From: Macrostomum lignano
Lineage: Eukaryota
Direction of reading: 5' to 3'
Length of the DNA stretch: 32,632 bases
Assembly (NCBI GenBank): GCA_002269645.1
Contig: NIVC01004172.1
Coordinates: 72,033-104,664 of the forward strand
The notes beneath the pieces were generated by a model. It was given only the letters and a program-made list of their open reading frames with translations, was not told the DNA's origin and did not search any database. Numbering within the stretch: position 1 is the first letter of the stretch; each line of letters starts with the position of its first letter. Position numbers and translations under genes: made by a program. Positions 3,808-27,500 of the stretch are shown here, in pieces.

Positions 3808-4235
3808 TTGAGTTCACATCACCTTGAGTCACATTCTTTGATCACTTGATCACTCAAGTTGAGTTCACATCACCTTGAATCACATCTTTGATCACTTGAT
3901 CACTCAAGTTGAGTTCACATCACCTTGACTCACATCTTTGATCACTTGATCACTCAAGTTGAGTTCACATCACCTTGAGTCACATTCTTTGATCACTTGA
4001 TCACTCAAGTTGAGTTCACATCACCTTGACTCACATCTTTGATCACTTGATCACTCAAGTTGAGTTCACATCACCTTGAATCACATCTTTGATCACTTGA
4101 TCACTCAAGTTGAGTTCACATCACCTTGACTCACATCTTTGATCACTTGATCACTCAAGTTGAGTTCACATCACCTTGACTCACATCTTTGATCACTTGA
4201 TCACTCAAGTTGAGTTCACATCACCTTGAATCACA
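3808..4235. repeat. 50-bp minisatellite (TTGAGTTCACATCACCTTGAATCACATCTTTGATCACTTGATCACTCAAG)n, about 8.5 copies
   Basis: Period measured from starts at 3859, 3909 and 3959; unit junction ACTCAAGTTGAGT is near-palindromic. Confidence 0.95.
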
Positions 4236-4382
4236 TGTTATCACTCATTGAGTTCCCATTACCGTACATACAGCTCACGTCTTTGATCACGTGAATTCAT
4301 AGCCAATTTAATAAAGAATGAAATCTTATCGCACTTGCAGCAACCAACCAAGTTAATTTGGCAGCGAACTGTCTCACCCGAG

Positions 4383-4568: not shown

Positions 4569-4855
4569 TAGCAAGCGCGAAACTCCAGCAGGCCCGTTTG
4601 GCAGCCAGCCAGCCACTGTTTGTTTGAGTTTTTAGAGGCTGAATGGACCACCACAGGAACAGGCCAGTTGCCGGTTGTGGGAGTTGAGGCAGCTCAAACA
4701 AACTAGAAGGACCAGCGTTCGGTTTTAAAACTTTAAAACTGCGGAGAAATCTAATTTGAATTATTAATTAGGGGAAAGTGAGTCGAACACTCACTTTATG
4801 TGACAGATGGTACTAAAGTAGAAAGAAAGTGACGCCAAAAATTAGTGCTAAATTG

Positions 4856-5495
4856 GCGCTAACAAATAGCATTCTAAGTGGCGCCAACAATTAGCGTCAA
4901 AACGGCGCCAACAATCGGCGTCAAAATTAGCGCCAACAATTAGCGTCAGAATGGCGCCAACAAATAGCGTCAAAATTAGCGCCAATAACCAGAATCAAAA
5001 TGGTGCCAACAATTAGCGTTGGAATGGCGCCAATAATTAGTGTCATAATTAGCGCCAACAATTAGCATCAAAGAGGCGCCAACAATTAGTGTCAAAATTA
5101 GCACCAACAATTAGAGTCAGAATGGCGACAACAATTAGCGTCAAAAGAGTACCAACAATTATCACTGAAGTGGCGCCAACAATTATCATTGAAGTGGCGC
5201 CAACAATTAGCTTCAAAAAGGCGCCAACAATTTGCCTTAAAAAGGCGCCAACAATTAGAGTCAGAATGGCGACAACAATTAGCGTCAAAAGAGTACCAAC
5301 AATTATCATTGAAGTGGCGCCAACAATTATCATTGAAGTGGCGCCAACAATTAGCTTCAAAAAGGCGCCAACAATTTGCCTTAAAAAGGCGCCAACAATT
5401 AGCTTCAAAAAGGCGCCAACAATTAGCCTAAAAAGGCGCCAACAATTAGCATTGAAGTGGCGCCAACAATTAGCCTAAAAAGGCGCCAACAATTA
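4856..5495. repeat. 21-bp minisatellite with core GGCGCCAACAATTAGC, about 30 copies
   Basis: Visible tandem array; overlapping ORFs in several frames are repeat artefacts. Confidence 0.93.
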
Positions 5496-5865
5496 GTCTC
5501 AAAGGAGCACTAACGAGTGTGCCAAATTTAGCGCTAAAAACTGCGCCTAAAGTACGTGACGAGGGGGGGGCGCGGCACAGTAGACTGGCGCAAAATTCTT
5601 GGTCAGAGATGAGCGCCATGATTAAAACTATCTCGATAGATTTTATGAACAAAGCTTTGTGAACTGTAGACCAGGACGCAGTTTTACTCATTTAAGTCTG
5701 TTGAAAAAAAAAATTGAAAAAGAAAATCAGAATGAGTTCAGCTGCAAATTGGCAACTAAAAAGCTGTATATTTTGTTTGCGCCAGGGTTGCGTTAGAAAT
5801 GAATGTTTTATTTCGGCGGCTAACTGGAAAACTCGGAACACGCTGGGCGCAAGTATTGGTGGCCC

Positions 5866-11300: not shown

Positions 11301-13129
11301 AGACTGTCGCCAGTTCTATATGCCGGCATAGAAGTGCTCAGTGGAGGTGACATGTCTCGGGTAGCTAGATTTCTTGACCGCCGAAGGCTTAAGCCGTCTT
11401 CCCGTTTAGGCAGAGGCGATTCGTCGTCACTGCCTTTGTAGCGACTTTTTGAACTTAAAAGCAGGCCTGTCTGTCTCTGCGAAGTTGCCGAGTCTCTAGC
11501 ATAGCTAGACCGCCTTGGAGACAGATTGTTCCCCAATGAAGATTGAAGAGGTGGCGATGAGGCTCCACTCCTCAAACCAGGAGCAGGTCGACGACGCGGA
11601 TAATCTGACGCTTGCGGTTCGGAATCGTCCGTATCTTTATTTGTACTTCCTCGCCTTTTAAGGTCATCTTTATCGTCTTTGATAGGTTTTCTACGAACCA
11701 GAGATTCATCTTGCCTAAATCTAGAAGGCGGCGATTCACTGCGATCATTCGGAGATTCCCTCTCCGAAGGTCTTCCAGGTCTTCGGAGTCTTCCAGGTCT
11801 CCGCAGGTCTTCCATTTCGGTTTTGCTGTTGTTGTCGCGTCGACGGTTTAGCGGTTCGTCGCGAAAAGATGACTTCAGAGGTGGCGAGCCGGATCTGAAA
11901 TCTCGGTCCGTCCTTCGGCGAGAAGGTAACTCCTCGGAATCGCTGTTCTTACCAGACAAGTCTCTCCGACGATTGAATGGTAAAGAGCCACTTCGCTCGT
12001 CAGTATCGTTTCGTCGGCGCGGGGAGGATTCATTACGTGGCGACAATCTTGACGGAGGCGGCGACTGGTCCCGTCTACCGCTAGTTAAACTCAACCGAGG
12101 CTTGTCGCGAGCGGCAGATCTAGATGACGGAGAATCGTAGTCGTCTTCCATAATCTTTTTGCGTCGAGCTGGAATGCTGTCTTTGCTGCTCAGACTAGGG
12201 GATTCTTTCCATTTTTTGAGCGGCTCCTCAAAGCTTCCTTTTTGAGCGGTTGACCGAAGTGTTGGCGAGGCGCTGTCATCGCGGTTTTCCGGTTCGAGAG
12301 CTGCCCTGGGTGATCGGCGACGCATTGGGATATCTCTATCACGATCTGTTACTCCAATCTCCTTTCTGCGTCGAATCGAAGTTTCGTCACGAAGTGAAGA
12401 CCTCGCTGGTGGCGAATCGTCGTCGCTAAGCTTGCTGTCAAGATTCCCTCCTCGAGTTAGGGACGAGCTTTTGTCAAGTAGGCTCGAACCCAGCCTACTA
12501 CTTCGTGGTGGAATATCGAATTCACTTTTGTTAGTGTCGGCTTGCCTCCGGCTCGAAGACCAGTTGGGTTTGTCCCTTGTTCGACTCAGTCTAGCGTCGG
12601 AGTTTTCTGACGAAGAGTCATCCTTGACTCCCAGCCGCATGTTGTCCGTACTGTCGTAGTGTCGCGCTTGTTTGCCATCGCCCGCTGTCGGACGGCTGAG
12701 CGAGCGGCTGCTGCTTGCGCCGTCGACGGATCGAGTTGGCAAATTTTGGGACGATTTCTGCTCAGCGTTGCGACTACGTCGAGCCAATGACGATCCCGTA
12801 GGTCGCGGCGATCCGGGTCGCTTTTTGTCGGCGCTGTCTTCGATGGTGTTTTCATCGCGACGCAAGCCAGCTGAAGAAGCGGACGAACGCGGCTGATAGG
12901 ACATAAAGCTGGCGTTCTTGTCGCGTTCCTCGTCGCTGTCGCTGACACACAGACGGTTGCGACTGCCGCCCGGTGCGGGGTGCTTCCGCTCGCTGCTGGC
13001 AGTGGAATCGAAGGTGCGACTGTTTCCGGGTGACTTGGACGGCGTCTCGGAGATAGGATTGAGTGGACTCGTTGGCTTTCCTAGGTACAGATTAGCCATT
13101 GAATCGTGTAGTCGAGCAAACCCGGCCAT
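8330..13129 (-). CDS. TTLL7: Tubulin polyglutamylase TTLL7-like, 1599 aa, single exon, with ~870-aa disordered N-terminal extension
   Basis: TTL core motifs RVNHFPGMAEICRKDLLA, KFDLRLYVLVSSCDPLRIY, HLTN, CFELLGFDILLD..LKPWLMEVNRSPSF. C-terminal IRFPGKS...YWRLSLDADKRRKVIDI...NRLLWCHGQGLW...CCRRVVQLC matches the TTLL7-specific C-terminal domain. ATTAAA at 8296-8291. Confidence 0.93.
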   Translation of the reverse strand: MAGFARLHDSMANLYLGKPTSPLNPISETPSKSPGNSRTFDSTASSERKHPAPGGSRNRLCVSDSDEERDKNASFMSYQPRSSASSAGLRRDENTIEDSADKKRPGSPRPTGSSLARRSRNAEQKSSQNLPTRSVDGASSSRSLSRPTAGDGKQARHYDSTDNMRLGVKDDSSSENSDARLSRTRDKPNWSSSRRQADTNKSEFDIPPRSSRLGSSLLDKSSSLTRGGNLDSKLSDDDSPPARSSLRDETSIRRRKEIGVTDRDRDIPMRRRSPRAALEPENRDDSASPTLRSTAQKGSFEEPLKKWKESPSLSSKDSIPARRKKIMEDDYDSPSSRSAARDKPRLSLTSGRRDQSPPPSRLSPRNESSPRRRNDTDERSGSLPFNRRRDLSGKNSDSEELPSRRRTDRDFRSGSPPLKSSFRDEPLNRRRDNNSKTEMEDLRRPGRLRRPGRPSERESPNDRSESPPSRFRQDESLVRRKPIKDDKDDLKRRGSTNKDTDDSEPQASDYPRRRPAPGLRSGASSPPLQSSLGNNLSPRRSSYARDSATSQRQTGLLLSSKSRYKGSDDESPLPKREDGLSLRRSRNLATRDMSPPLSTSMPAYRTGDSLSPRRQDDLKDDDRKKREEAGSWPKSGYRPGLQRKEGLQSNETPGPKSKFQGDKEQPKSGTFKRAVTTPKQASLEKKKPLRVETSDSETESSSGTKGFKREPIKSPVRPKPAGKDGRSLSPPSRSFSKSSRDELSPRSAKGLDLAQPKAGTASKRLDGRKQEPESTKKGLSPRASSKDDSRSPRSSVLSDSKSNKKEPSYLRSGPKAGPNSTRDLSPPRTAEKKSYGFKSSFRMSDKDKDSENRASKGPTEFEFSRYETHSLRVVKLKRPLPANLAGTRYALVETAARLIGFVRTNKDDFKTPFLIWNDTFISMERLTQLKPFQRVNHFPGMAEICRKDLLAKNMGKLNQRYPSEYKFAPRTWCLPDQLANFRQHTQEQKSEVKPSYICKPVDGTSGRGIKIYKTAEEVPQTVESQCVLQEYVSNPFLIENVKFDLRLYVLVSSCDPLRIYLFNDGFIRMSSEPYVDPQKCKADEDLNFIHLTNCSVNKQNRPTDTYGAASRRRGAKVSGMKRPLMFLNSYLQQNKYDVALVWRRIVDLIIKTVFAAYPHVVRSYRQCRPTESPGSGSACFELLGFDILLDTDLKPWLMEVNRSPSFDYDNSEEEKVKLQLLQETLMLLNFSPADWKAAKQTADSPEVPAKTAQKEVTELTALLARLKRQDRMKDVDTRICQRFRCIFPVDDATKQEKLVSVMLDAISALLEGSQMEALHREVKTFNASKTDEVAKKLAQLGSKTVQQLMDDGQAGSSGSDSEIDDQAAGGRRKPAAGRLPLKDGPKKSLRKSQEKQKDPAQKQPHPSESMMANEREQLAQRTLKFLNELSIRFPGKSNRAAEQMLRQLQDNWLARKADVSSYWRLSLDADKRRKVIDIARQNVRIALDKALRMTASDVAAAADNLASLFEKLYNRLLWCHGQGLWETFAGNTGWELILRQSREAPTETEINCCRRVVQLCQDGLMVVYLFSDAAQQLQQQQQQQQASEQLPLKASLAVL

Positions 13130-13165
13130 GTTTTTGGTCTATTAGGGCAGGGAAACCCGCCAGTG

Positions 13166-13324
13166 GTTGCTAAGCAGGATTAAACTAATTGATTTCACTT
13201 GAAAATCTTCTTTGCTTTTGCTAGAGCTAAACGCAAATTCCAGTGTTTTTCCTCTACTGCCTATATAAAATCCGACAGCTCTGCCTGCGCTTGCGTGCTT
13301 GGCGTGGCCGTCGCCCCTGGCAAC
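13166..13324. promoter_or_regulatory. Two RFX X-box-like motifs upstream of TTLL7 (GTTGCTAAGCAG 13166-13177; GTCGCCCCTGGCAAC 13310-13324)
   Basis: The distal motif fits GTNRCC-N0-3-RGYAAC; the proximal one has a strong half-site. Both lie in a CpG-rich patch 40-190 bp upstream of a cilia-related gene. Confidence 0.45.
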
Positions 13325-13887
13325 ACGCGCCCATACACAGCACCGCAGCGAGGCCAGTGCGCAGTTTGCGTAGAAAAACTTCTCTACCCCCTCGCTAGCA
13401 ATGCGCAATTCTGCGACTCGCACACAGCCGTGTAATTTAAAATTGGCACACAATTCAGTGTACAGTGGACTGTGGGTACAGTGTGCAGAATTCTCGTAAA
13501 ATCTACCAAATAAGACGTTTTTGAGTAGTGCTTTTTTCAAACTTATGCACCAAGGCATTTTCTTCAATTTCAAAAAAATGTTTACTCACCCCCGAGTACT
13601 CAGCCTGCTTGAAATTAACGAAAACGGAGGCTTGAAAATTTATACGAAGTATGCTAATCTATGTTAGGCCACATTTAGGGCTAAATATTGCGTCGCTGTA
13701 TTGCTAAATATATTTTGACTGAAATAATAACACTGGCAGACCGATGGCCAGGACAATTATTCAGAAAAAGTGTACGCTCGATAGCTGGAAAATGTTCATC
13801 AATCAGAGCCAACAAGCCATTGGTTAAAATAACTTTTTACTGATATATGGGGAAGGCTGAAGACCACTCGGATGAGGATGAGGCGAC

Positions 13888-14078
13888 TCCTATGGGACTG
13901 AAGGGCGACTGTTATGGGACTGGAGGGCAACTGTTATGGGACTGGAGGGCAACTGTTATGGGGCTGGAGGGCGACTCCTATGGGACTGGAGGGCGACTCT
14001 TTTAGGATTGGAGGGCCACTCTTATAGGACTGAAGGGCGACTCTTTTAGGACTGGAGGGCGACTCTTTTGGGACTAGC
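13888..14078. repeat. ~21-bp minisatellite (GGGACTGGAGGGCGACTCTTAT-like), about 9 copies
   Basis: Visible tandem array just downstream of the RidA poly(A) signal. Confidence 0.85.
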
Positions 14079-14209
14079 TAGAGGGGCGATTATTTTTTAT
14101 GTTTGAATCTAAATGACGATTCCATTAAAGGTCAGATCGCAAACTTTATTGAAGGCTATGGAGGCGAGCTCTTCATGGTCTTTAGACTAATGATTGGGTT
14201 TTCGGACAG

Positions 14210-14659
14210 TCACAGCTTAGCCGAGGGCCTACTACTGCCGCTACTACTATCAGTAGCCACCTCGGCCACGACAATAATTTCAACGCGTGCCCCGGCGGGC
14301 AAGTTGGACACCTGGTAACATTCCCTAGCCGGATAGGGCCGCTGAAAGAATTCAGCGTAGACTGAATTGAAGCTCTGTGCGTCGCGAATGTCGGCTAGCA
14401 GGGCGGTGCACTTTAACACGCTGTTGTAGTCGACGCCTGCGGCGGCGAGAACGGCGCCAACGTTGCGCAACGCCTGTCTAGCCTGGCTCTCGGTGTCCAG
14501 GCCGGCCAGCTGCCCGCTGTCGGGCAGGAAGCCGCACTGGCCCGACAGGAACAGCAGGCGGCTGTTCGGCGATGACGTCATCACAGCCTGACTTAGCGGA
14601 TTTTTTACGATTGGAGCATTTTTTGTCTCTATCACCTTTCTGCCGCTGTTGGCTGGCAT
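14210..14659 (-). CDS. RIDA: RidA/YjgF/YER057c/UK114 2-iminobutanoate/2-iminopropanoate deaminase, 149 aa, single exon
   Basis: Motifs P.SQAV, LFLSGQ, QARQALRN, FF..PYPAR, V..LP.GARVEI. Catalytic Arg (PAR) and Glu (VEI) retained. ATG at 14659 preceded by CTCTATCTTCATCTTCCAG|CC; AATAAA at 14150-14145. Confidence 0.93.
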   Translation of the reverse strand: MPANSGRKVIETKNAPIVKNPLSQAVMTSSPNSRLLFLSGQCGFLPDSGQLAGLDTESQARQALRNVGAVLAAAGVDYNSVLKCTALLADIRDAQSFNSVYAEFFQRPYPARECYQVSNLPAGARVEIIVVAEVATDSSSGSSRPSAKL

Positions 14660-14720
14660 GGCTGGAAGATGAAGATAGAGCCAACGGCAATCAAACACTG
14701 ACACACTTGGAGTAATAGCT

Positions 14721-15095
14721 CAGACTGGATTCACACATTTCAGACTGAATTCACATATTTCAGCCCTAATACACACATTTCAGTCTGAATTCACACAATA
14801 CAGACTGCATTCACACATTTCAGGCTGGATTCACACATTTCAGACTGAATTCACATATTTCAGCCCTAATACACACATTTCAGTCTGGATTCACACAATA
14901 CAGACTGCATTCACAAATTTCAGGCTGGATTCACACATTTCAGACTGAATTCACATATTTCAGCCCTAATACACACATTTCAGTCTGGATTCACACAATA
15001 CAGACTGCATTCACAAATTTCAGGCTGGATTCACATACAAATAACTCAAGACTGGATTCACACAAATTTAGATGTAACTCGGACTGCATTCACAC
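14721..15095. repeat. 20-bp monomer array organised as a 100-bp (5-monomer) higher-order repeat x3
   Basis: The monomer order at 14741-14840 recurs at 14841-14940 and 14941-15040. Confidence 0.92.
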
Positions 15096-16014
15096 GGAAA
15101 AGACTCCATCTAGATGTACTTGGTTCGATTCAGTGTTCATAGATGTTTGCCGAGAGAAATAAATCATTATTAATAATGAAGAATGAAAACTTACTTAATA
15201 AACAAACTCGCAAAGACAAATTTCACAAATTTCGAAATTATGCTTCAATGGCACAGTGAATGAAAGCTTTCTTCTGAAATGCTTCTTCAGAGCTCATGCG
15301 GGTCAGAAATTGCCGCGTGCATTTTATCAGTTATTATCAGTCTGAGAGAGCGAATGTTGTACTTGTACATGCATATTAAATGTACACTATTTGGCTAGAG
15401 GCCGCAAACCCAAAAATGACATTTTCCTAAAATAAGATTTTTCTACCACAACTACTAATAGTAGCATAGAAGTCATTTTAGCTCTATTTTTTTAATTGAA
15501 ATAATTAGAGCCAGTCATAGAACGAAATTGCACTTCAATATTTGATAAACTCACACGCTTGTACAACAGTGAGATTTTGGCTTTTTAATTGTCGTCTATT
15601 AACTTTAGTTTAATAAAAAAGCGAGCAACTCACAGTAACAATATATACACAAGAGTACATACTAATACAGCATATGAAGTTAGCCAGAAGAATACAAATA
15701 CACAAAGACATTGTGCTCAGATTCAAAGGAAGAGTTGCAGAGGGTTAGCAGTATGGTTATAAAGATACGAGTATTAAGGGTTTTCAAGTAACATTTAAAA
15801 TAAAAAAATAACAACCATTGTCATAATGCAGTACCCATACTTTTTTCGCTGCTATAGTAGTAGCTACGACAGATTGCCTTTGCTATGGTAACCATGATAA
15901 TAAATTATCTAATATCGAATATGAAATTCGATTGAATACATGTATTTCGCATTCAATTAAAATCCATGCTAGAATAGCTGCCTAGATTAATTATTAGCAA
16001 TTACTAGCAATATT

Positions 16015-16366
16015 GGTAGCCAAGACAACATCCCCGTTGCTATGGTAGCCAAGACAACATCCCCGTTGCTATGGTAGCCAAGACAATATTTCCGTTGCTA
16101 TGGTAGCCAAGGCAACATCCCCGTTGCTATGGTAGCCAAGACAATATTTCCGTTGCTATGGTAGCCAAGGCAACATCCCCGTTGCTATGGTAGCCAAGAC
16201 AACATCCCCGTTGCTATGGTAGCCAAGACAACATCCGTTGCTATGGTAGCCAAGGCAACATCCCCGTTGCTATGGTAGCCAAGACAATATTTCCGTTGCT
16301 ATGGTAGCCAAGGCAACATCCCCGTTGCTATGGTAGCCAAGACAACATCCCCGTTGCTATGGTAGA
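16015..16366. repeat. 29-bp minisatellite (GGTAGCCAAGACAACATCCCCGTTGCTAT)n, about 12 copies
   Basis: Period measured from 16015 to 16044. Confidence 0.93.
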
Positions 16367-16380
16367 TAAGTTAAAACTGT

Positions 16381-16584
16381 ATCGCTATAGCAACTGAATC
16401 CGAAATAACACCCTGCTGCTATAGGAACCAAATCTAAAAATAACACCCGAGTTGCTATAGCAACCGAATCCAAAAATAACACCCTGCTGCTATAGCAACC
16501 AAATCCAAAAATAACACCCGAGTTGCTATAGCGAGTTGCTATAGCAACCAAATCCAATATAACACTCCCGTTGCTATAGGAACC
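16381..16584. repeat. ~35-bp tandem unit containing the palindrome GTTGCTATAGCAAC (X-box), about 6 copies
   Basis: Perfect palindromes at 16451-16464 and 16535-16548; degenerate copies around them. Confidence 0.85.
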
Positions 16585-16649
16585 GAGGCTACTCAGAGCA
16601 AAAATAGCATTATTGTTGGAATGCAATGATAAAATCTCCCCAGCAACTG

Positions 16650-17012: not shown

Positions 17013-19521
17013 TTTTTATGTTAATTTAGCGTTTCTCATGAAATAAAATACAAAATCTTGCTATACTGTTGAAATATTTTATAAATATGCTGGGGTGTCC
17101 TTGGTTGTCTTGACCATACATGCCCAACAGCCGGCCAATTCGTTTTGTAGTACTAATTAGATGACGAGGCTTTAAACTTAAATAATACTGTCCTAGTTAC
17201 TCCTACCGTTTACCCCAAATTATGCTAATTTTTGCTTTAGGATTTCTTTCATAGGTAAAGTCACATTTTTGGTCAAAAAGAAAGTTGCACAGCCTGGTGA
17301 AATTTCAAAGCTGGGCATGTATGGTCTGGAATTTCATTGCTATGGCTCTATAAAAACTTTTGATAAGTTCAATGTGAGAGCCAAATAACTGAGGTGGCAA
17401 ATTCAGACCATTATAACTTATATTTGGTATTCATATTCTTAAGATGTTATCTCAACAATTAATAAAATATATGGGAGATGTTTCAAATACCTTGCTTGAC
17501 TAGGTTAAGTCTGTAACAGGTTCAGTTGTCTAATAGGTTTGATAAGGAAAGAAGTAGTTGTCTTTTAATGCTCTATAGATCAATTGGTCAAATCTAGGTA
17601 GTTAAATGTAATTAGAGGACTATATATTCAGATCAAACATAGTGCTTAGGCAAGGAATGAGCTAGGAGAGCTTCTTGCTTGGTTTTAACATTGGTTTATA
17701 TAGCATTTTAGTCTTTCACATTAGGGAATAATTTGGATAATAAATATCTACTTTTTTTATTGGCTAAGGCTGGGGTCATGTCTTTAGCCTTTGCTTGTTA
17801 AGGCATATTCATTAGTTGGCAAACATTCAAATTGGATAGTAGCTTTCAGAGCCAAAATGTAATAACTTCACTGTTTTTTACTTTGTTGGCTGGCAAAATA
17901 CTTGCTAGCTTATTGATTAAATCTGTAAACTTCTAATGACAGTGTCAACCTAGTTGGATCCCATTATTAATAATGAGTGACATCTTGCTTTAAAAAGTGG
18001 AGAATGACAAGTTGATACTGGCCTATAAAGCACTGGCTTTAACATTAGCAGGGCTTATGCCAATCCTATTTCTTTATAATCTTTCAACTACTATCTATAG
18101 TATAGACAATTGTCAAGTTTTGTTCATAAAATTATTTTGATTCCAGAAGAGTAATCTATGAACTATTTTAAGTCTAAATATTAAATACTTTTAAGAGACT
18201 TAAGCCTGATTAAGCACTAATTATATGGTTTAAAACTTGTTATAATAAATATAATATATAAAATATAAAATATATAATAAATACTTTATGGGGCACAGCA
18301 GCTGACTGATCTGAGCAGCATCAAAACAACGAAAAGTATTGAAATTTAATTGAAACTGACTTGTACATAAATCGGTCATTTAATTTTTTTCATACGGTTT
18401 AAAGCTCAGAACTTGTCACCGGCTGCTTTTAAAGCCTAAAGTAAAAAAGTTACCTTCTTAGAAAGATACAATCTTTCCTACAATTTGAAGATAGTTATTA
18501 AAAAAACAAATGCTTTTAAATTAATTTGACAGTAAATCTGCTATAAAATAAAATATCTCTTTGCCTAGTTGTATTGTTTGACGTGTAACAATTTAAAATG
18601 TTTTTAGCCATTTTAGCTATTTGTTTTTATAGGTTGAAAAAAGTTTCTATGAAAAAAAATTAGTCAGCTCGGCCTCACACACAGCACACAGGACAAGCCT
18701 CTGCCCTTGAGCTGGATGACAGCTAGGCCTAGTGAAGCCTTAGCCCTTTAATAGCGACAATCTTACTAGGATAGGTAGGCCTAGCTCTATAATGTACCAA
18801 AAGCAATCTTAGAATTGTTTTAATGCTAGCCTTGCCTATCTGATCTAAAATAACTAGCTAGCCTACTTAGTTTATCTATCAAGAATGCTCTGTTGCAGCC
18901 AAGGGTTAAGCTTATTCGAAGTTATTCATACCAGACAGTTTTTCAAGGGAATAGCAAAAAATGGTCCTAGTCAGGATCATTTGTTGGCCAATCAATAGGC
19001 CTATTATTGCAGTGTGGATCGTGATAGCCGATAATCACTAAATTTAATGGGCCTCAGGCCACTCAGGACAGAAATTAATTAGGACTACTTTAAGGCATTG
19101 TTACAGATTTCGAGTCAGAGTTTCAGGGAATTTGGTCATTGGGGCAGAAAGTTTTTTGGTCTTATTAAATATAGGCCATATTCTAGGGCATGTGTCATGA
19201 CTATCAGACCATGATCCTGACCACATGATGGTTTCGATGGCTCTATGCTAATATAAATAAAAATTTCATTGTATACTAATATAATTTGTTTTATTTTAAA
19301 AAGAAGTTCAAACAAAACCAAAGTAATTTTTAATAAAACAATTATAAAATATTATTAGCAAAAGAAAAAAGTAGGCCTTAGTCTAGTCTATTTTTAGGCT
19401 AGGCTTTTTAGCAATCTTTTACTTTACTGTGTTTAATTAATTTAACCATTTTTTTATTTCAAAACAAAGATTGTAGGAGGATAAAAGGTAAGTGTCTTTA
19501 AGTGTCAAATAAGTCAATTAG

Positions 19522-20017
19522 TCAGTAATAATGAGCCACCTAGTATAGGAAGTTGCCAAACTCCTTTCTAGGAAAGAGCCTGCACTAGAGATACTTGTTG
19601 AGATAGCTTTCAAACAGAGCTTCAGAAGTGCCATGCATGTGTAGCATACTGTGCGCCCAGTGGTACACCAAATCCACTAGCTAGGTGACGATAAAGTGGG
19701 TACCCTTGAAAAAGCTACCCTTCATGATGCTTTTCTGCATCCTGCAGGTTGGACATGCCTAGGTATAGCCATCAACAAATTGGGCTCCATCCTGTCTCTG
19801 TAGCCGCATGGCTAGAGCCTCAGGGCATTGTTCACATGCCCGAGAATTTTGCAGTAGCCCATAGTTGGCCAGCCAGCAAATAGTTTGCTAGCTGTTAGAC
19901 GTCAGCAGCATAAGCTTGTGTAGTGTGATATCAATGTTGCATAGCTCGGTTGCTGGCCTTAGATTGGCCTTGGGCCAATAGTGGGTGTAGAGGACCTTCC
20001 AGCCATTAGTAAATTGG
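19522..20017 (-). pseudogene. Decayed, internally deleted Merlin (IS1016/IS1595/ISXO2-like) DNA-transposase relic
   Basis: Manual translation of one 165-codon frame: ...ICWLANYGLLQNSRACEQC..MRL....DGYT*ACPTCRMQKSIMKGSFFKGTHF..T*LVDLVYHWAHSM|LHMHGTSEALFESYLNKYL*CRLFPRKEFGNFLY*VAHYY*. This is the Zn-ribbon N-terminus of eukaryotic IS1595-type transposases fused to their C-terminus, with no DDE core. Strong acceptor TTTTTTTCTCATTTCAG ends at 20018. TIRs not found. Confidence 0.75.
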
Positions 20018-21407
20018 CTGAAATGAGAAAAAAAGTGAAAAATAATTAAACATAGTAAAATAAAAGATTGCCTTTTTTCCTTTATTTAATAGCAGCTTTA
20101 CAATTTTTTTATATTTTAAATGCATATAGACTAGGCCTATACTGATTTGATTGCAAAGAGGTCTATAGCTCATGTCTATAGCCCAAATACATGTAATATT
20201 TTATTGAAAAGTGATAAAAAAGCAATAAATATTCATTCAATAATTTATTCACATATTAGCTGATTTAAATGCCATTTATCAAAACATATCTAAGACACTT
20301 TTTGACACTAACATAAGGATATATTGTTTTCCCTGTATCAAAAAATAAAAGCTTCAAAAATATTAGAAATTTCTTGAATGCAGTTTTGAAATTCTTTTGC
20401 ACCCTTTCCTCAGAAATAAAAACTGCAGCCTAACCATTTGGGAAGCTGCAACCCCAAGTCCTTAGTCAGAGCTCCCCTTCTTGCATCCTAAGGAAGAAGC
20501 AAGAAAAGAATAATATCTTACAAACTTACACCCTATAGCCAATGCAGTTTGCCATATATTTGTTATTGTAGACAAGTAGTTATGTTTAAAAGTAGCCAAC
20601 AATTGGACCAAAAAGCTGCCAACTAGACGGCAACTTTATCTTATATTTATCATTTGACCTACAAGTGTGTGAATATTAAATAATTTAAGAACAAATATAC
20701 AATATTCGTATATTAGGATAAGGTACATAATGACATGATCAGTATATGCACTAATTGAGAAAACTAGGTTGGGCAAACTGGAAAGGTTGGGGTGAGGCAC
20801 CATTGCACAATAAAATACATGTAACTTTTGGCATGCACATGGTATTACTATGAAATTTTATGCTTTAATAAAGCTACTATAAAAGTAAATATATTGATAG
20901 GTAAAATTTAACTTATTTAAACAATCTTGCTGTCCATAGAAAATAGTCTGAAAACTTTTGCAATGCATTTTATGTATAAGACAATATATATGGACAATAC
21001 CTGGCTTGTCTTGCTAGGTAATAGTGTGGCCAAGGCAGCTTAGGTATGTTGCAAAACTTAATAGCCAAGCACCAAAATTTGTAAAGGGATATATAGGACA
21101 AAAATGAATTAAATAAGAAAAAATTGAACAAAGAGAGAAAAAATTATGTTATTGAAAAACAAATTAAAAGAGCAAGGAAGCATTAAGTAGTCGAAACCAT
21201 AGTGAGAAGATTTTAATTGCATACAGAGCAAAGCTATGTTGCAAAAAGCCTCCCTAGATACAATTTTATTGCACTCTTGCTGTTAGACAAAAGTATTTCA
21301 TACATTATTTTAGACACATCTAGGTTTTAATATTTTATATATTCATTAAATCTATCTGCTAGAACTAAGGATCAAGTTCAGTGGTTGCATTCTTCTAACC
21401 AAACTTG

Positions 21408-21584
21408 ATGTTATCAGGCGCTGGCTTAACAATGTCTGAACGAATATCCTCACACTTGGAGGTGAAGGCCGGTGTTCTGGTCAAGCGTTCCCAGAACAAG
21501 CATTTATTTACTAGGGAGAACTTTAAAGAGCGATACTTTATGCTCACGCCAATGAGTCTGCAGTATTTCGAGTGCTCGAAATCG
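21408..21584 (+). CDS. TEC: Tec kinase coding exon 1 (PH domain N-half)
   Basis: LVKRSQNKHLFTRENFKERYFML resembles Btk/Tec KRSQ..K..P.NFK.R.F; donor TCG|GTCAGT; 5' UTR acceptor TCTGCTAG at 21362. Confidence 0.88.
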
Positions 21585-24500
21585 GTCAGTAACATTACTA
21601 ACTAATTTTTTAGTTTTGCCACTGCTGTTCTAAGAAATAACCCAGCTACAGATACCCGGGCTGTGCCACCGAAACCCTCCCAGATTCTCAGTTGCTGTGC
21701 CACCGAAACCCTCCCAGATTATCAGTTGCTGTGCCACTAAAACCCTCCCAGATTCTCAGTTGCTGTGCCACTAAAACCCTCCCAGATTCTCAGTTGCTGT
21801 GCCACCGAAACCCTCCCAGATTATCAGTTGCTGTGCCACTAAAACCCTCCCAGATTCTCAGTTGCTGTGCCACCGGAACCCTCCCAGATTCTCAGTTGCT
21901 GTGCCACTAAAACCCTCCCAGATTCTCAGTTGCTGTGCCACCGGAACCCTCCCAGATTCTCAGTTGCTGTGCCACTAAAACCCTCCCAGATTCTCAGTTG
22001 CTGTGCCACTAAAACCCTCCCAGATTGTCAGTTGCTGTGCCACCGGAACCCTCCCAGATTCTCAGTTGCTGTGCCACTAAAACCCTCCCAGATTCTCAGT
22101 TGCTGTGCCACCGGAACCCTCCCAGATTCTCAGTTGCTGTGCCACTAAAACCCTCCCAGATTCTCAGTTGCTGTGCCACTAAAACCCTCCCAGATTGTCA
22201 GTTGCTGTGCAGCCTCCCAGATCCCCAGTTGCTGGGCCAGCCTCCCAGATCCTCAGTTGCTGGGCCAGCCTTTCAGGTTCTCAGTTGCTAGGCCAGCCTC
22301 CCAGATCCTCAGTTGCTGGGCCAGCCTCCCAGATCCCCAGTTGCTGGGCCAGCCTCCCAGATTCTCAGTTGCTGTGCCAGCTTCCCAGATTCTCAGTTGC
22401 TGGGCCAGCCTCCCAGATCCCCAGTTGCTGGGCCAGCCTCCCAGATTCTCAGTTGCTGTGCCAGCTTCCCAGATCCTCAGTTGCTGGGCCAGCTTCCCAG
22501 ATCCTCAGTTGCTGGGCCAGCCTCCCAGAGTGTCAGTAGCTGGGCCAGCCTCCCAGATCCTCAGTTGCTGGGCCAGCCTCCCAGAGTGTCAGTAGCTGGG
22601 CCAGCCTCCCAGATTCTCAGTTGCTGGGCCAGCCTCCCAGATCCCCAGTTGCTGGGCCAGCCTCCCAGATTCTCAGTTGCTGTGCCAGCTTCCCAGATTC
22701 TCAGTTGCTGTGCCTCCGGAACCTTCCCAGATTCTCAGTTGCTGTGCCACCGGAACCCTCCCAGATCCTCAGTTGCTGGGCCAGCTTCCCAGATCCTCAG
22801 TTGCTGGGCCAGCCTCCCAGAGTGTCAGTAGCTGGGCCAGCCTCCCAGATTCTCAGTTGCTGGGCCAGCTTCCCAGATCCTCAGTTGCTGGGCCAGCCTC
22901 CCAGATCCTCAGTTGCCGGGCCAGTCTCCCAGATCCTCAGTTGCTGGGCCAGCCTTTCAGGTTCTCAGTTGCTAGGCCAGCCTCCCAGATCCTCAGTTGC
23001 TGGCCAGCCTCCCAGAGTGTCAGTAGCTGGGCCAGCCTCCCAGATTCTCAGTTGCTGGGCCAGCTTCCCAGATCCTCAGTTGCTGGGCCAGCCTCCCAGA
23101 TCCTCAGTTGCCGGGCCAGTCTCCCAGATCCTCAGTTGCTGGGCCAGCCTTTCAGGTTCTTAGTTGCTAGGCCAGCCTCCCAGATCCTCAGTTGCTGGGC
23201 CAGCCTCCCAGATCCTCAGTTGCTGGCCAGCCTCCCTGACCCTCGCAGATCTGAATCACAGCACTCCCGTCTCCCTAGCAGAGTTCGCCATCTCGGGCCA
23301 GCAAGCCGCGCGGTCGGATCTTCCTGGCGCTGATGAAAGCGGTGGAAAGTGTCGATAAGCTCGACACTAGATTCGGCGGCGGGCGCTGGCGATTCGGCTT
23401 ACAAATTGTGTACGTAGAAGACGTGCACTACACGCACTACACTCTGTACGCTCTGGCCGCCACTGAGGCTGACCGGGCCGACTGGCTGCGCCTAATCCGG
23501 GACAACGCTCTGGCTAGAGGGGCCAGGTTTGGCCCAGTCTATCATCCTGGCGCCTGGCTTAAGCCTGGCCGATTTGCCTGCTGCAACAGTAGTGATAAAA
23601 AATCGCACGGCTGCTCGCCAGCTACGGATGCTCAACAGCTGCAGCAGCAAGATGAGTCAGTTCAATTGGCTACTCAACGGCAGCAGAGACCTGTCAATCA
23701 GTTACAGCCGCTGTCCCAGCAACAGTTGACCTCGCAGACTGGGGTTAGTAACTCTTTACGACCTATTTCATTTATGTACATTACTGTATACAGCTTAGTG
23801 CAGGGGTCGGCAACTTTTTTACCTCAAGGGCCAGGTAAAGAACCTTGCTAATGGCTGCGGGCCGGATGTGAGAGAAGAGAAGAAAGGAAAGAAGGGAGAG
23901 GAGAAGTGAAGATAGATAAAATGAGAGATGAAATGAGAGAAAATGAGAAGAGAGAGGGAAGCAGAGAAGAGGGGAGAGAGAAGGTATAAGAGAGCTGAGA
24001 AGAGACCTTGAGCGGGCTGGATAGAGAGGCTTCCTGGGCCGCATGTGGACCGCGGGCCGGAGTTTGCCGACCCCTTTTTTATTAGAGGCCGGGGGTTGTG
24101 TGCACCCTGGTGCACTTTAAGCGACATGGGCACACAACCGGCGAGAGGCATTACTGCCCATTTCGCCGACTCCCCTGAGCAGGCATACAAGCGCGCGGAT
24201 ACGTACGCAGGCACACACTCACACAGGAGTGTACAGCGGCCCTAACTTTATATTATCGTTAGGCATGTACACTTCACTGCGCCTTGGGGGTTGGCTCTCA
24301 AGGCCGTTAATTGCACGAGCAGAGCCAAGCCGAGATTCCAATTCAGCCCCAAATTAATGTGACTGCACTTGGAATCGAGCCTGGGTCGCTGGCACACCAG
24401 AGCCTGCGCTAGACCGCTGGGCTACGGCCCCCTTTTGCCGACCCCCGGTGTAGAGGTAAACTCCTCTGGTTTTGCACCACGATCCCACGTTCATTTGGAG

Positions 24501-27500
24501 ATTGTGTGCACACAATTGAGAACCAACTCCCCCCACCCCAAAGCCCCAGAGAGTGTACATGCCTGACGATAGTATTGGCGCGCTTGAATGTACTTTTTTA
24601 CCAGTGCAAGCCTTACCCTTTAGCTGTACCGGATGTTACTGCTGTGAGCTAATGTCATAGAAGCTTTATTACTCAATCCTAATTTGAAAACTCAGTTCTA
24701 CTAGTAGTGGACAAATCATTTTTATGACTCTTCTATATTCACAGGTGGGCAATTCCCGGTCAACGTCCAACTTTATTACTGACTCGTCAGCCAACGGTGT
24801 GACTGGCGGCGGCGACCAGCCAACTGGCGCGGCTGGCAACGTTGTGGTTGCCATACATAATTTCCGTCCAATGCGCTCCAACCAAATTCGATTGGAGAAG
24901 GTTCGTTTTTTTAATTTCAATTGTTTTATAGTTTGGTATTCCAATATACTAAAACAATTTATTTTATGCTGTACTTTCATTTTGCCGTTTTTCATAAATA
25001 TTTAGTCAACTAATCCTTTCTCATTGATCTCCTGATCACCTGATCTACGAGCTAGTCTCAATGAGCTGCTGACCAACTGATCTATTCTCATTAAGCTGCT
25101 GACCAACTGATCTATTCTCATTGAGCTGCTGACCAACTGATCTATTCTCATTGAGCTGCTGACCAACTGATCTATTCTCATTGAGCTGCTGACCAACTGA
25201 TCTATTCTCATTGAGCTGCTGACCAACTGATCTATTCTCATTGAGCTGCTGACCAACTGATCTATTCTCATTGAGCTGCTGACCAACTGATCTATTCTCA
25301 TTGAGCTGCTGACCAACTGATCTATTCTCATTGAGCTCCTGACCAACTGATCTATTCTCATTGAGCTGCTGACCAACTGATCTATTCTCATTGAGCTGCT
25401 GACCAACTGATCTATTCTCATTGAGCTGCTGACCAACTGATCTATTCTCATTGAGCTCCTGACCAACTGATCTATTCTCATTGAGCTCCTGACCAACTGA
25501 TCTATTCTCATTGAGCTGCTGACCAACTGATCTATTCTCATTGAGCTGCTGACCAACTGATCTATTCTCATTGAGCTGCTGACCAACTGATCTATTCTCA
25601 TTGAGCTGCTGACCAACTGATCTATTCTCATTGAGCTCCTGACCAACTGATCTATTCTCAATGAGCTGCTGACCAACTGATCTATTCTCAATGAGCTGCT
25701 GACCAACTGATCTATTCTCAATGAGCTGCTGACCAACTGATCTATTCTCAATGAGCTGCTGACCAACTGATCTATTCTCAATGAGCTCCTGACCAACTGA
25801 TCTATTCTCAATGAGCTGCTGACCAACTGATCTATTCTCAATGAGCTGCTGACCAACTGATCTATTCTCAATAAGCTGCTGACCAACTTATTTATTATAG
25901 ATACCAAAGTAATCATTAAAGTAATTGTAGAAACCAGAATCGCTAAACTTAGCATATACTTCCTATTTTATTGCTACTACCTGAGGCGCAGGTTAACATA
26001 GCAGCGTGATTCTATATCAACAATAAAAAATGACAATTTTTCGCAGGGCGGACGCTACATGGTAGTTGACGGATCCAATGCCAAATGGTGGTACGTCCGG
26101 GATTCATCTGGGTAAGTGTAGTTTTTTTTCGGTGCAATATATTCTACACTTAATTCTTAGAAAACGATTCGAGAAAGAATTTCGAATTGCAGAGAGTACG
26201 GCTACATTCCGGCTAATTATATACGCAAGCCCGACAGTCTTGAAACTTACGAGTAAGTTCTATTTGCCTAGCAATTGGCTACTACTACTAATTAATTAGT
26301 AATTAGTTAAATTATTATACATGACTAATTCGCGTTTCCTATACTGACAGCTGGTACTACAAGAACATCAGCAGACAGCGGGCTGAGCACATACTGCTCG
26401 ATCTGGGCCGCAAAGAAGGCTGCTTCCTAGTTCGTGACTCAGTGTCTAAACGGAACAGTTACACCTTGTCTGTTATGGCTAAGGATGTTAATAAGTGAGT
26501 GTTGTTCATGCGCTCCTTTAATTACAGTGCATGACTGTCTTTGAACTCGGTAATTTGACTGTGCTGGCATCGTTGGAATCTTCTCCATTCACTGTTGCTG
26601 TGTCTCTCTTAGTCTCTACTAGCCTCCATTTCCCACCTGTCCTTCCTTTTGATTCCTCTCCCTCGTGTCTACCTCAATCTTTTATTGTGTACCTCCATCT
26701 CTCCTTGTCTACCCCTATCTCTCCTTGTCTGCCTCCATCTCTCCTTGTCTACCTCTATCTCTCCTTGTCTACTTCCATCTCTCCTTGTCTACTTCCATCT
26801 CTCCTTGTCTACCTCTAGCTCTCCTTGTCTACCCCTATCTCTCCTTATCTACCCCCATCTCTCCTTGTCTGCCTCCATCTCTCCTTGTCTACCCCTATCT
26901 CTCCTTGTCTGCCTCCATCTCTCCTTGTCTACCTCTATCTCTCCTTGTCTACTTCCATCTCTCCTTGTCTACTTCCATCTCTCCTTGTCTACCTCCATCT
27001 CTCCTTGTCTAACCCTATCTCTCCTTGTCTACCTTCATCTCTCCTTGTCTACCTCCATCTCTCCTTGTCTACTTCCATCTCTCCTTGTTTACCTCTCTCT
27101 CCTTGTCTACCTTTATCTCCCCTTGTCTACCCCTATCCCTCCTTCCTCTCTACATTTCATAATAATTATCGCATTAAAAGAATTAGCAGTGTTATAGGGC
27201 ATGTATGCATCGACCTGCTAACTTTATAATGCATGCAATGCTCCAATCTGCATGCTAACAAGTCCAGTCTGGGAGAGGGGGAACGGGAGAAAATCGATTG
27301 AGCCCCTCTCCCCCAGTTGTTGCGGCACTAATGATTGCCGTTAGCTGTGTATTTTGGGCCAATATTTGTGCCTCAGATGGAATATAAGCGTTTATATACG
27401 CTATGGAAAAGTTGTGCATCTAATTATCCTCTGTCAATAATCGTTACCATCTTTTATTGCTTTAATATTTCAAATTCCCAAATCCAGTTGTAGGCTGATT

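What the first reader, a model, noticed from the sequence alone, without database searches (positions are those of the whole stretch)
19522..20017. RIP-like mutational signature: all five premature stops of a transposase relic are TAG within CTAG
The 165-codon Merlin-like frame has no frameshift and no internal TAA/TGA. It has five TAG stops (plus-strand CTA at 19888, 19759, 19681, 19585 and 19540), each preceded by C. Two fall where the family has Trp (GY.W.C; YLW.R), implying CTGG>CTAG; the others fit CCAG>CTAG. All five are explained by C-to-T at the inner C of 5'-CCAG-3' on either strand, a non-CpG (CpA) change. Classic CpG decay is also apparent (inferred DE>NK and R>C). CpA>TpA hypermutation of repeats is the hallmark of fungal RIP; I know of no established equivalent in animals. 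This could be a repeat-directed deamination or CHG/CAG-methylation genome defence. Ancestral codons are inferred.
Basis: partly seen in the sequence, partly recalled or inferred. Interest (0 to 1): 0.72.

Follow-up and report, generated by a model that had tools for sequence, protein, structure and literature searches.

The report
Decayed flatworm transposon with deamination-type stops
This is a dead, internally deleted Merlin DNA transposon in the flatworm Macrostomum lignano whose five stop codons all arose by cytosine-to-thymine changes at CAG sites; this looks like wear from DNA methylation rather than a fungal-style repeat-mutating defence, but only two independent copies could be compared.

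Summary
The minus-strand frame 20016..19522 has five in-frame TAG codons, all inside CTAG, and ends at the family's natural TGA.

The window is Macrostomum lignano contig NIVC01004172.1. The relic is a 663-bp non-autonomous Merlin element (19410-20072). It has 5'-GG inverted ends and an 8-bp target duplication. Its DDE core is deleted, and a 4-bp frameshift lies near the start.

A second copy and about 90 relatives show the stops were Q, W, Q, W, W (CAG or TGG). So every stop is C>T at CAG on one strand or the other.

The two copies differ by 33 transitions and 3 transversions. Sixteen of 17 polarisable changes are G:C>A:T. Loss is heaviest at CpG, then CAG (7 changed, 10 conserved), then other cytosines (12 changed, 92 conserved).

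The CCAG rule fails outside the stops. RIP's substrate index is not met. The window's minisatellites, two other repeat pairs and about 18 kb of paralogous sequence lack the pattern. The stops predate a genome duplication.

Best reading: methylation-linked deamination (M. lignano keeps DNMT1 and DNMT3) of one transposon family, not RIP. This rests on two independent copies.

The parts
19410..20072 (-). Whole non-autonomous (internally deleted) Merlin-superfamily element, 663 bp
   Evidence: It is bounded by inverted repeats starting 5'-GGCAATC. The same insertion sits in paralogous contig L004 at 4709-5380. A second, shorter family copy is at L001 9934-10355.
20028..20072 (-). 5' terminal inverted repeat (GGCAATCTTTTATTTTACTATG...)
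   Evidence: the repeat finder pair I1, 44 nt and 84% complementary. The terminal GG is seen.
19410..19454 (-). 3' terminal inverted repeat. Its last base is changed (GATTGCC to GATTGCT), a CpG-type C>T against the first G of the target duplication.
20073..20080 (.). Target-site duplication, 5' side (GGAAAAAA on the minus strand)
   Evidence: L004 keeps GGAAAAAA on one side and GGAAAAAG on the other (7 of 8 match).
19404..19409 (.). Target-site duplication, 3' side. Only a remnant (AAAAAG on the minus strand) is left, because the window has lost the two G's that L004 keeps.
19522..20006 (-). Transposase remnant. It starts at the ATG 20006-20004, has a 4-bp frameshifting deletion near 19976 and a 6-bp in-frame indel near 19941, and ends at the natural TGA 19524-19522.
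   Evidence: P0044 ends '...ILYWIRHYY', matching the window's '...FLY*VAHYY*'.
19630..19650 (-). Approximate junction of the internal deletion that removed the DDE_Tnp_IS1595 core. N-terminal '...LVYHWAHS' is joined to C-terminal 'MHGTSEALFESYL...'.
   Evidence: tblastn places P0040 residues 15-126 on 19974-19657 and residues 300-337 on 19638-19525. Pfam finds no domain in the relic.
19888..19890 (-). Stop 1, TAG from CAG (Gln)
   Evidence: The L001 copy has CCAG here and P0001 reads SNSQQT.
19759..19761 (-). Stop 2, TAG from TGG (Trp)
   Evidence: The L001 copy has CTGG. W is present in 78 of 83 relatives at this column.
19681..19683 (-). Stop 3, TAG from CAG (Gln), inferred
   Evidence: Relatives have Q in the motif L-x-Q-[ILM]-[LIV]-D, for example P0044 'LELQQLITLIY'.
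19585..19587 (-). Stop 4, TAG from TGG (Trp), inferred
   Evidence: Relatives read 'SYLxEFMWR' or 'EFQWR' (P0040, P0044 and others).
19540..19542 (-). Stop 5, TAG from TGG (Trp), inferred
   Evidence: P0044 'ANILYWIRHYY' and P0040 'NMIYWIPNYF' align with the window's 'GNFLY*VAHYY'.

Best explanation
The feature is a dead, non-autonomous Merlin DNA transposon in an intergenic stretch of the Macrostomum lignano genome. Its five stops are the visible part of a decay made almost entirely of cytosine deamination-type changes (C>T on either strand). Loss is heaviest at CpG, next at CAG, and weak at other cytosines.

One rule, C>T at CAG on either strand, explains the whole pattern:
- CAG becomes TAG.
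- C-TGG becomes C-TAG through the opposite strand.
- TGG>TGA would need a change in CpC context, and CAA>TAA in CAA context. Both are disfavoured, and neither is seen.

The most likely cause is cytosine methylation of this element in the germ line. That means maintenance and de novo DNMT activity at CpG, with DNMT3-type spill-over to CpA, especially CAG, followed by spontaneous 5mC deamination.

Shown here: element anatomy, ancestral codons, substitution spectrum, direction of change, context ranking, and absence of the pattern in control sequences.
Inferred: that methylation is the cause, and that it includes CAG.
For: Identity and anatomy:
- The window is M. lignano NIVC01004172.1.
- The TIR starts 5'-GG. 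The TSD is 8 bp, perfect (CCAGTGGC) in L001 and 7 of 8 in L004.
- Relatives carry PF12762.

Ancestral codons: Q, W, Q, W, W.

Spectrum, window copy against L001 copy (359 bp):
- 33 transitions and 3 transversions, against 224:133 in about 18 kb of paralogous sequence (Fisher p = 3e-4).
- Differences are spread over codon positions 12/7/9, with 17 non-synonymous and 7 synonymous codons. So the decay is neutral and the bias is mutational.
- Sixteen of 17 polarisable differences are G:C>A:T.
- By context: of at least 11 ancestral CpG sites, only 1 is intact in both copies. CAG has 7 changed and 10 conserved. Other non-CpG C has 12 changed and 92 conserved (p = 0.006, or 0.04 without the two stops). 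CpC is 2/35 and CpT is 4/46.
- The dependence is on the 3' neighbour (A 13, T 4, C 2). The 5' neighbour does not matter (A 8, C 4, G 4, T 3). That is how DNMT-type enzymes read sequence, and not how APOBECs do.

Other support:
- CpG o/e is 0.21 in the element and 0.27 in the AT-rich intergenic block. There, CpG sites alone are hypermutable in the paralog comparison (7 of 65, against about 0.016 elsewhere).
- L004 still has ACG where the window has ACA and L001 has ATG, which confirms an inferred CpG ancestor.
- Literature: M. lignano retains DNMT1 and DNMT3 and has low-level 5mC (PMC11292947, PMC9246332). Mammalian non-CG methylation is concentrated at CAG and CAC (PMC7736785).
Against: - Only two independent copies, plus one paralogous duplicate, could be compared. 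The CAG excess rests on 7 events. Without the two stops that prompted the finding, p = 0.04.
- No methylation data were examined, and non-CpG methylation has not been reported in flatworms.
- Two other interspersed repeats (14:11 and 13:14 transitions to transversions) and the window's minisatellites (51:49; CAG 1 of 17) do not show the pattern. So methylation would have to be selective for this element or family.
- CTG, the opposite-strand partner of CAG, is hit only 1-2 times, so this is not symmetric CHG methylation.
- Since the duplication, the surrounding region shows no CAG excess.
Confidence: 0.55

Rival explanations
1. Ordinary neutral decay of an old pseudogene, with CpG methylation decay only. 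On this view the five-of-five TAG pattern and the CAG excess are coincidence, made more likely by a Trp- and CAG-rich transposase N-terminus.
For: - The frame offers 7 TGG, 5 CAG, 5 CAA and no CGA. TAG is therefore already about 48% of all stop-creating paths, and P(5/5 TAG) is about 0.024.
- Six of 7 TGG are preceded by C, so the CTAG context is nearly automatic for stops derived from Trp.
- The finding was picked post hoc.
- The CAG excess is p = 0.04 once the two ascertained stops are removed.
- No CAG excess appears in paralog divergence or in minisatellites.
Against: - Non-CpG differences are still 20 transitions to 3 transversions, against roughly 1-2:1 in three controls.
- Sixteen of 17 polarised changes are G:C>A:T.
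- Five of 10 TAG-capable in-frame codons are hit, where the per-lineage divergence is about 6%. None of 12 TGA- or TAA-creating transition paths is hit.
- An independent CTGG>CTAG (Gly>Arg, not a stop) occurred in the L001 lineage.
Confidence: 0.25
2. Enzymatic hypermutation of the transposon. Either a RIP-like, homology-triggered C>T process or an AID/APOBEC-like deaminase mutated copies in bursts, for example on single-stranded intermediates during excision or gap repair.
For: - The spectrum is transition-only and runs G:C>A:T.
- CpA<->TpA is the largest single class (13 of 33). RIPCAL-style dominance is about 0.65-1.0, which is the 'medium' range for RIP-affected fungal repeats (PMC2621366).
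- Both copies are gap-repair-type internal deletion derivatives.
- TGG>TAG is the classic APOBEC3G outcome (PMC7308096).
Against: - RIP substrate index is 1.58 (threshold 1.03 or less; affected fungal repeats 0.27-0.74). TpA/ApT is 1.10, no higher than the flanks at 0.99-1.08 (PMC2621366).
- CpG is the most affected context, the reverse of Neurospora-type RIP.
- CAA, CAC and CAT are barely affected.
- Other repeats and tandem arrays are unaffected.
- There is no 5' dinucleotide preference and no strand-coordinated runs. C>T and G>A alternate along the element.
- Changes kept accruing slowly after the duplication (10 transitions, 2 transversions in the element). That fits a steady process rather than a burst.
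Confidence: 0.12
3. The TAG codons are not stops. Either TAG is a reassigned sense codon or is read through, or the frame is a domesticated exon.
For: Only TAG interrupts the frame. A polypyrimidine tract followed by CAG lies just upstream.
Against: - The five positions correspond to two different residues, Q and W, in the sister copy and in relatives.
- The catalytic core is deleted and the N-terminus is frameshifted.
- Substitutions are spread evenly over codon positions.
- Host genes in the window read normally with the standard code.
Confidence: 0.01

Closest known systems
Merlin / IS1016 (IS1595-family) DNA transposons, non-autonomous deletion derivatives (Feschotte 2004; survey in PMC8101967)
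   Same: The TIRs start 5'-GG and the target-site duplication is 8 bp. The remnant's N- and C-terminal parts are homologous to transposases of about 320 aa that carry DDE_Tnp_IS1595 (PF12762). Internal deletion is the usual way such derivatives arise.
   Different: This copy has lost the whole DDE domain. The family has a conserved CxxC...CxxC N-terminal region that Pfam does not recognise as Zn_Tnp_IS1595. No autonomous copy from M. lignano was found in the protein databases.
5-methylcytosine deamination decay of methylated transposons (vertebrate CpG decay; plant CG/CHG decay; DNMT3 non-CG methylation at CAG and CAC, PMC7736785)
   Same: The changes are unidirectional C>T on both strands. 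CpG is almost eliminated, leaving TpG/CpA products. The secondary target is defined by the 3' neighbours (CAG). The host keeps DNMT1 and DNMT3.
   Different: A mutational footprint of non-CpG methylation is not established in animals. Invertebrate methylation is usually in gene bodies, whereas here the genes look unmethylated (CpG o/e about 1 or above) and the transposon-bearing intergenic block looks methylated. CTG is spared, unlike symmetric plant CHG.
Fungal repeat-induced point mutation (RIP)
   Same: C>T transitions inactivate a repeated transposon with TAG stops. CpA>TpA is the largest single dinucleotide class.
   Different: CpA/TpG is not depleted and CpG is hit harder than CpA. Only CAG among the CpA contexts is raised. 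Other repeats are unaffected. RIP is a process of the fungal premeiotic dikaryon and depends on RID, and neither is known in animals.
APOBEC3G-type editing (GG>AG, giving TGG>TAG stops; PMC7308096, PMC4574155)
   Same: Trp codons are converted to TAG. The five stops have a CC context on the deaminated strand.
   Different: There is no general 5'-C preference beyond the stops and both strands are affected without clustering. The target is a cut-and-paste DNA transposon with no reverse-transcribed single strand. APOBEC3 enzymes are mammalian.

Membership tests
Merlin superfamily (eukaryotic IS1016/IS1595-like DNA transposons) | Terminal inverted repeats with a conserved terminal 5'-GG-3' (PMC8101967) | tested here: met
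   The ends read GGCAATC... and ...GATTGCC in the L001 copy. The window and L004 copies read GGCAATC... and ...GATTGCT. The arms are 44-45 nt and 84% complementary.
Merlin superfamily (eukaryotic IS1016/IS1595-like DNA transposons) | 8- or 9-bp target-site duplication | tested here: met
   L001 has CCAGTGGC on both sides (8 of 8). L004 has GGAAAAAA and GGAAAAAG (7 of 8). The window copy has lost 2 bp of the 3' duplicate.
Merlin superfamily (eukaryotic IS1016/IS1595-like DNA transposons) | Transposase with a DDE_Tnp_IS1595 (PF12762) catalytic domain | tested here: inconclusive
   The relic itself gives no Pfam hit because the core is deleted. Its N- and C-terminal remnants do align to proteins that carry PF12762: P0019, P0036, P0040, P0044 and about 30 others.
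Fungal-type RIP | Depletion of CpA/TpG: (CpA+TpG)/(ApC+GpT) of 1.03 or less (PMC2621366) | tested here: not met
   The index is 1.58 in the element interior, 1.68 in the frame and 2.28 in the L001 copy.
Fungal-type RIP | Excess of the TpA product: TpA/ApT of 0.89 or more, and above non-repeat controls | tested here: inconclusive
   The value is 1.10, but the flanking non-element DNA gives 0.99-1.08, so it does not discriminate.
Fungal-type RIP | CpA is the dominant C>T context, and the process acts on repeated DNA in general | tested here: not met
   CpG is the most affected context, and only CAG among the CpA contexts is raised. Minisatellite arrays give CpA 7/58 against CpC 7/41 and CpT 11/65. 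Two other repeat pairs give 14:11 and 13:14 transitions to transversions.
Fungal-type RIP | RID-type cytosine methyltransferase homologue acting before meiosis on duplicated sequence | not testable with these tools
   The M. lignano genome and proteome could not be surveyed here.
AID/APOBEC-type DNA editing | Fixed 5' dinucleotide preference (CC or TC) and strand-coordinated clusters | tested here: not met
   The 5' base of non-CpG C/T differences is A 8, C 4, G 4, T 3. C>T and G>A alternate along the element.
Methylation-driven (5mC deamination) decay | CpG depletion with TpG/CpA products, unidirectional C>T | tested here: met
   CpG o/e is 0.21. One of at least 11 ancestral CpG sites is intact in both copies. 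There are three CA/TG double-decay pairs. Sixteen of 17 polarised changes are G:C>A:T. L004 retains ACG where the window has ACA and L001 has ATG.
Methylation-driven (5mC deamination) decay | 5mC actually present on the element, in CG and CAG contexts, in germ-line cells | not testable with these tools
   There is only literature that the species has DNMT1, DNMT3 and low-level 5mC (PMC11292947, PMC9246332). The genomic pattern is stated to be unknown for any free-living flatworm (PMC9246332).

The most novel reading that the evidence does not exclude
Macrostomum lignano selectively methylates some DNA transposons, and not its gene bodies, at CpG and also at CAG. This methylation is mutagenic enough to act as an irreversible, RIP-like-in-outcome inactivation of transposons in an animal. 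Less likely, a dedicated deaminase edits transposon DNA. The evidence does not exclude either. The transition-only, G:C>A:T, CpG-then-CAG spectrum is specific to this family among the sequences that could be examined.
Probability: 0.2. Interest if true: 0.7.

Novelty: new member of a known kind. Interest (0 to 1): 0.38.

Why it matters
The genomic pattern of DNA methylation is reported as unknown for any free-living flatworm (PMC9246332). M. lignano is one of the few flatworms that still has DNMT1 and DNMT3.

This locus gives an evolutionary footprint suggesting three things:
- Methylation there falls on a transposon-bearing intergenic block rather than on genes.
- It may include CAG sites.
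- It leaves a measurable mutational scar that kills transposase reading frames.

If that holds genome-wide, it would be an unusual transposon-directed methylation pattern for an invertebrate, and a rare case of a heritable footprint from non-CpG methylation. If it does not, this is an ordinary dead transposon.

Tried and rejected
- **Pfam on the relic.** The frame, with X at the stops, gave no family. The family was identified only through relatives.
- **More M. lignano copies.** None were found beyond L001 and the paralog. The first protein search gave one hit. A profile search gave 58 relatives, none from M. lignano. tblastn of all relatives against the held loci found nothing further. Exact look-ups of two small element ORFs found nothing. 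The eukaryotic genome itself cannot be scanned with these tools.
- **CTAG enrichment as a regional signature.** The window as a whole is not enriched (113 observed, 126 expected). The cluster at 29880-30756 is a 32-bp satellite with one CTAG per unit. The TAG/CAG ratios in the AT-rich block are unremarkable.
- **Dcm-like CCWGG target.** Only stop 2 fits, so this was rejected by inspection.
- **CCAG rule.** Rejected.
- **Purifying selection as the cause of the transition excess.** Rejected.
- **Codon reassignment or a domesticated exon.** Rejected.
- **Wasik et al. 2015 (PMC4603488).** It could not be read.

Full report
**Observation**

- Read on the minus strand from 20016, the region gives 164 codons and a terminal TGA at 19524-19522.
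- There are five in-frame TAG codons, with plus-strand CTA at 19888, 19759, 19681, 19585 and 19540. Each lies inside a CTAG. There is no internal TAA or TGA.
- Three further CTAGs in the frame are not stops.

**What the sequence is**

- The window is 100% identical to Macrostomum lignano contig NIVC01004172.1, assembly GCA_002269645.1.
- The host genes are eukaryotic: a TTL-domain gene, a RidA-like gene, a MOZART1-like gene and a Tec/Btk-type kinase.
- The frame lies inside a 663-bp element at 19410-20072. The element is bounded by 44-45-nt inverted repeats that begin 5'-GGCAATC.
- Only one database protein is close: P0001, an M. lignano 'hypothetical protein', 78% identical.
- The P0001 locus (L001) holds a shorter, independently deleted copy of the same element. 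That copy has a perfect 8-bp target-site duplication, CCAGTGGC.
- A paralogous contig (L004, NIVC01003575.1) is 95-97% identical over about 18 kb and carries the same insertion. Its target duplication is GGAAAAAA and GGAAAAAG. The window copy has lost two bases of one duplicate.
- An exhaustive HMMER search and a profile search found about 100 more distant relatives. Many are about 320 aa long and carry DDE_Tnp_IS1595, PF12762.
- A 5'-GG TIR, an 8-bp TSD and this domain are the defining Merlin features (PMC8101967).
- The window copy keeps the first 118 or so residues and the last 38 or so. The catalytic core is deleted, with the junction near 19640.
- P0044 ends '...ILYWIRHYY' where the window reads '...FLY*VAHYY*'. 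So the TGA at 19524-19522 is the natural stop.
- Contrary to 'no frameshift', the true ATG is at 20006-20004 in another frame. A 4-bp deletion near 19976 shifts the frame. A 6-bp in-frame indel lies near 19941.

**Ancestral codons**

- Stops 1 and 2 are CAG and TGG in the L001 copy.
- Stop 2 aligns with a Trp found in 78 of 83 relatives.
- Stop 3 aligns with the Gln of L-x-Q-[ILM]-[LIV]-D. Stops 4 and 5 align with the Trp of 'FMWR' and 'ILYWI'.
- So the order is Q, W, Q, W, W, and each stop is one transition from TAG.
- All five stops are shared with the L004 paralog, so they predate that duplication. The two that can be compared are absent from L001.

**Is it more than chance?**

- On the inferred ancestral frame (7 TGG, 5 CAG, 5 CAA, 0 CGA), context-free models give P(5/5 TAG) of about 0.024. 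They give P(5/5 C-TAG) of 0.001-0.003.
- These values are nominal and post hoc.
- Six of the 7 TGG are preceded by C, so the 5' C carries little information for the Trp-derived stops.

**The wider spectrum**

- Over 359 aligned bases, the window and L001 copies differ by 33 transitions and 3 transversions. BLAST alignment gives 29 and 4.
- The differences fall on codon positions 12/7/9, and 17 differing codons are non-synonymous against 7 synonymous. The bias is therefore mutational and not due to selection.
- Differences were polarised using family consensus residues, the four TIR copies and the L004 copy. Sixteen of 17 are G:C>A:T.
- Changed against conserved cytosines, by 3' context:

| Context | Changed | Conserved |
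|---|---|---|
| CpG | 7 single differences plus three CA/TG double-decay pairs | 1 CpG site still intact in both copies |
| CpA | 13 | 44 |
| CpT | 4 | 46 |
| CpC | 2 | 35 |
| CAG (within CpA) | 7 | 10 |
| CAA (within CpA) | 1 | 11 |
| CAC (within CpA) | 1 | 3 |
| CAT (within CpA) | 2 | 14 |

- CAG against all other non-CpG cytosines (12 changed, 92 conserved) gives Fisher p = 0.006, or 0.04 without the two stops.
- The 5' base of the CAG events is C three times, A three times, T once and G once. Conserved CAGs have G 4, C 3, T 2 and A 1. There is no CCAG rule.
- The L001 lineage has its own polarised CTGG>CTAG, which turns MAGRP into MARRP and is not a stop.
- The rule 'C>T at CAG on either strand' explains all of this. 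CAG gives TAG. C-TGG gives C-TAG through the opposite strand. TGG>TGA needs a CpC-context change and CAA>TAA a CAA-context change, and neither is seen.

**Controls from the same genome**

- About 18 kb of window-against-L004 divergence gives 224 transitions and 133 transversions. There is no CpA or CAG excess (CAG 9 changed, 707 conserved).
- Two other interspersed repeat pairs give 14:11 and 13:14 transitions to transversions.
- Variants in 13 minisatellite arrays, polarised against each array's consensus, give 51 transitions and 49 transversions. C>T is 32 and T>C is 19. C>T per available site is 0.44 at CpG and 0.12-0.17 at the other dinucleotides (0.12 at CpA). CAG is hit 1 time in 17.
- So the pattern is neither genome-wide nor a general property of repeats.
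- CTAG is not enriched in the window as a whole. The CTAG cluster at 29880-30756 is a satellite with one CTAG per unit.

**Mechanism**

*RIP is not supported.*
- The substrate index is 1.58, against a threshold of 1.03 or less. RIP-affected fungal repeats give 0.27-0.74.
- TpA/ApT is 1.10, which matches the flanks (PMC2621366).
- CpG is hit hardest, and other repeats are spared.

*APOBEC-like editing is not supported.*
- Its hallmark is TGG>TAG (PMC7308096).
- Here there is no general 5' preference, both strands are hit, and there is no clustering.

*Methylation-linked deamination fits best.*
- The ranking CpG, then CpA (mainly CAG), then CpT and CpC, read from the 3' neighbour, is the ranking expected of a DNA methyltransferase with DNMT3-like non-CG activity. 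In mammals such methylation is concentrated at CAG and CAC (PMC7736785).
- M. lignano retains DNMT1 and DNMT3 and has low-level 5mC (PMC11292947, PMC9246332).
- The element has CpG o/e 0.21 and the AT-rich block at 17013-21600 has 0.27, while exons are at about 1 or more.
- In the paralog comparison, CpG sites are hypermutable only in that block: 7 of 65, against about 0.016 for other cytosines there. There is no CpG excess in the non-coding stretch 13130-16600.

I therefore favour methylation-linked deamination of this element, at confidence about 0.55. Ordinary decay plus coincidence gets about 0.25. Enzymatic hypermutation gets about 0.12.

**Limits**

- Only two independent copies and one duplicate were available.
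- The M. lignano genome could not be searched for the rest of the family.
- No methylation data were examined.
- The CAG signal rests on a handful of events.

**Verdict**

- The reading 'CpA-type C>T, possibly CAG methylation' is partly supported.
- The readings 'CCAG-specific' and 'RIP-like repeat-directed defence' are not supported.
- The object is a new member of a known kind: a decayed non-autonomous Merlin element. It carries a suggestive lead about transposon-directed, partly non-CpG methylation in a flatworm, and that lead can be tested.

Noticed in passing
window 17013-21600 (compare 8330-13129 and 13130-16600): CpG depletion is mosaic. The AT-rich intergenic block has CpG o/e 0.27, while exons are at about 1.0-1.4. 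In the comparison with paralog L004, CpG sites are hypermutable only in this block (7 of 65, against about 0.016 for other cytosines). There is no CpG excess in the non-coding stretch 13130-16600. This suggests methylation of intergenic or transposon DNA rather than of gene bodies.
   Followed up: partly
L001 9934-10355 (gene call 10001-10297): The annotated M. lignano gene BOX15_Mlig019988g1 (P0001, 98 aa) is just the N-terminal remnant ORF of a Merlin deletion derivative of about 420 bp. The derivative has intact TIRs and a perfect 8-bp TSD, so this is probably an annotation artefact.
   Followed up: yes
window 4997-25863 vs L004 (NIVC01003575.1): A paralogous contig, 95-97% identical, carries the same genes and the same transposon insertion. 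A third contig carries identical RidA-like and MOZART1-like proteins. This fits the known large-scale duplication in this genome.
   Followed up: partly
window 19375-19403, 20125-20141, 18715-18870; L001 9850-9925 and 10365-10400: Motifs of the type TAGGCCTAG / TAGTCTAGTCTA recur in the flanks of both Merlin copies, partly as an outer inverted pair, and again about 600 bp away. Flank similarity of 73% extends beyond the TIR between the two loci. This could be a preferred target repeat or an older host element. It is unexplained.
   Followed up: no
window 414-980, 1620-2553, 2962-3469, 3808-4236, 4826-5503, 21660-23244, 25052-25896, 26666-27144, 27803-28616, 29099-29555, 29880-30756, 31491-32080: The window is unusually dense in minisatellites (periods 19-50 bp, 8-37 copies). 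They generate many long spurious ORFs in several frames.
   Followed up: partly
window 24208-24435 and 32103-32336; window 17147-17279 vs L001 2570-2699: Two other short interspersed repeats (83% and 78% identity) were found. Their transition/transversion ratio is roughly 1:1, unlike the Merlin pair.
   Followed up: partly
window 20017-20040 (minus strand): The inner part of the 5' TIR ends in a polypyrimidine tract followed by CAG (ttttttctcatttcag). This looks like a splice acceptor and sits a few bases upstream of the transposase ATG. It is conserved in the L001 copy. Its significance is unknown.
   Followed up: no
window 19812-19815 vs L004 and L001: The window and L001 both have CTAG here, where the closer paralog L004 has CTGG. 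Either L004 changed A>G, or CAG>TAG arose in parallel in two lineages. The second would fit a CAG hotspot.
   Followed up: no
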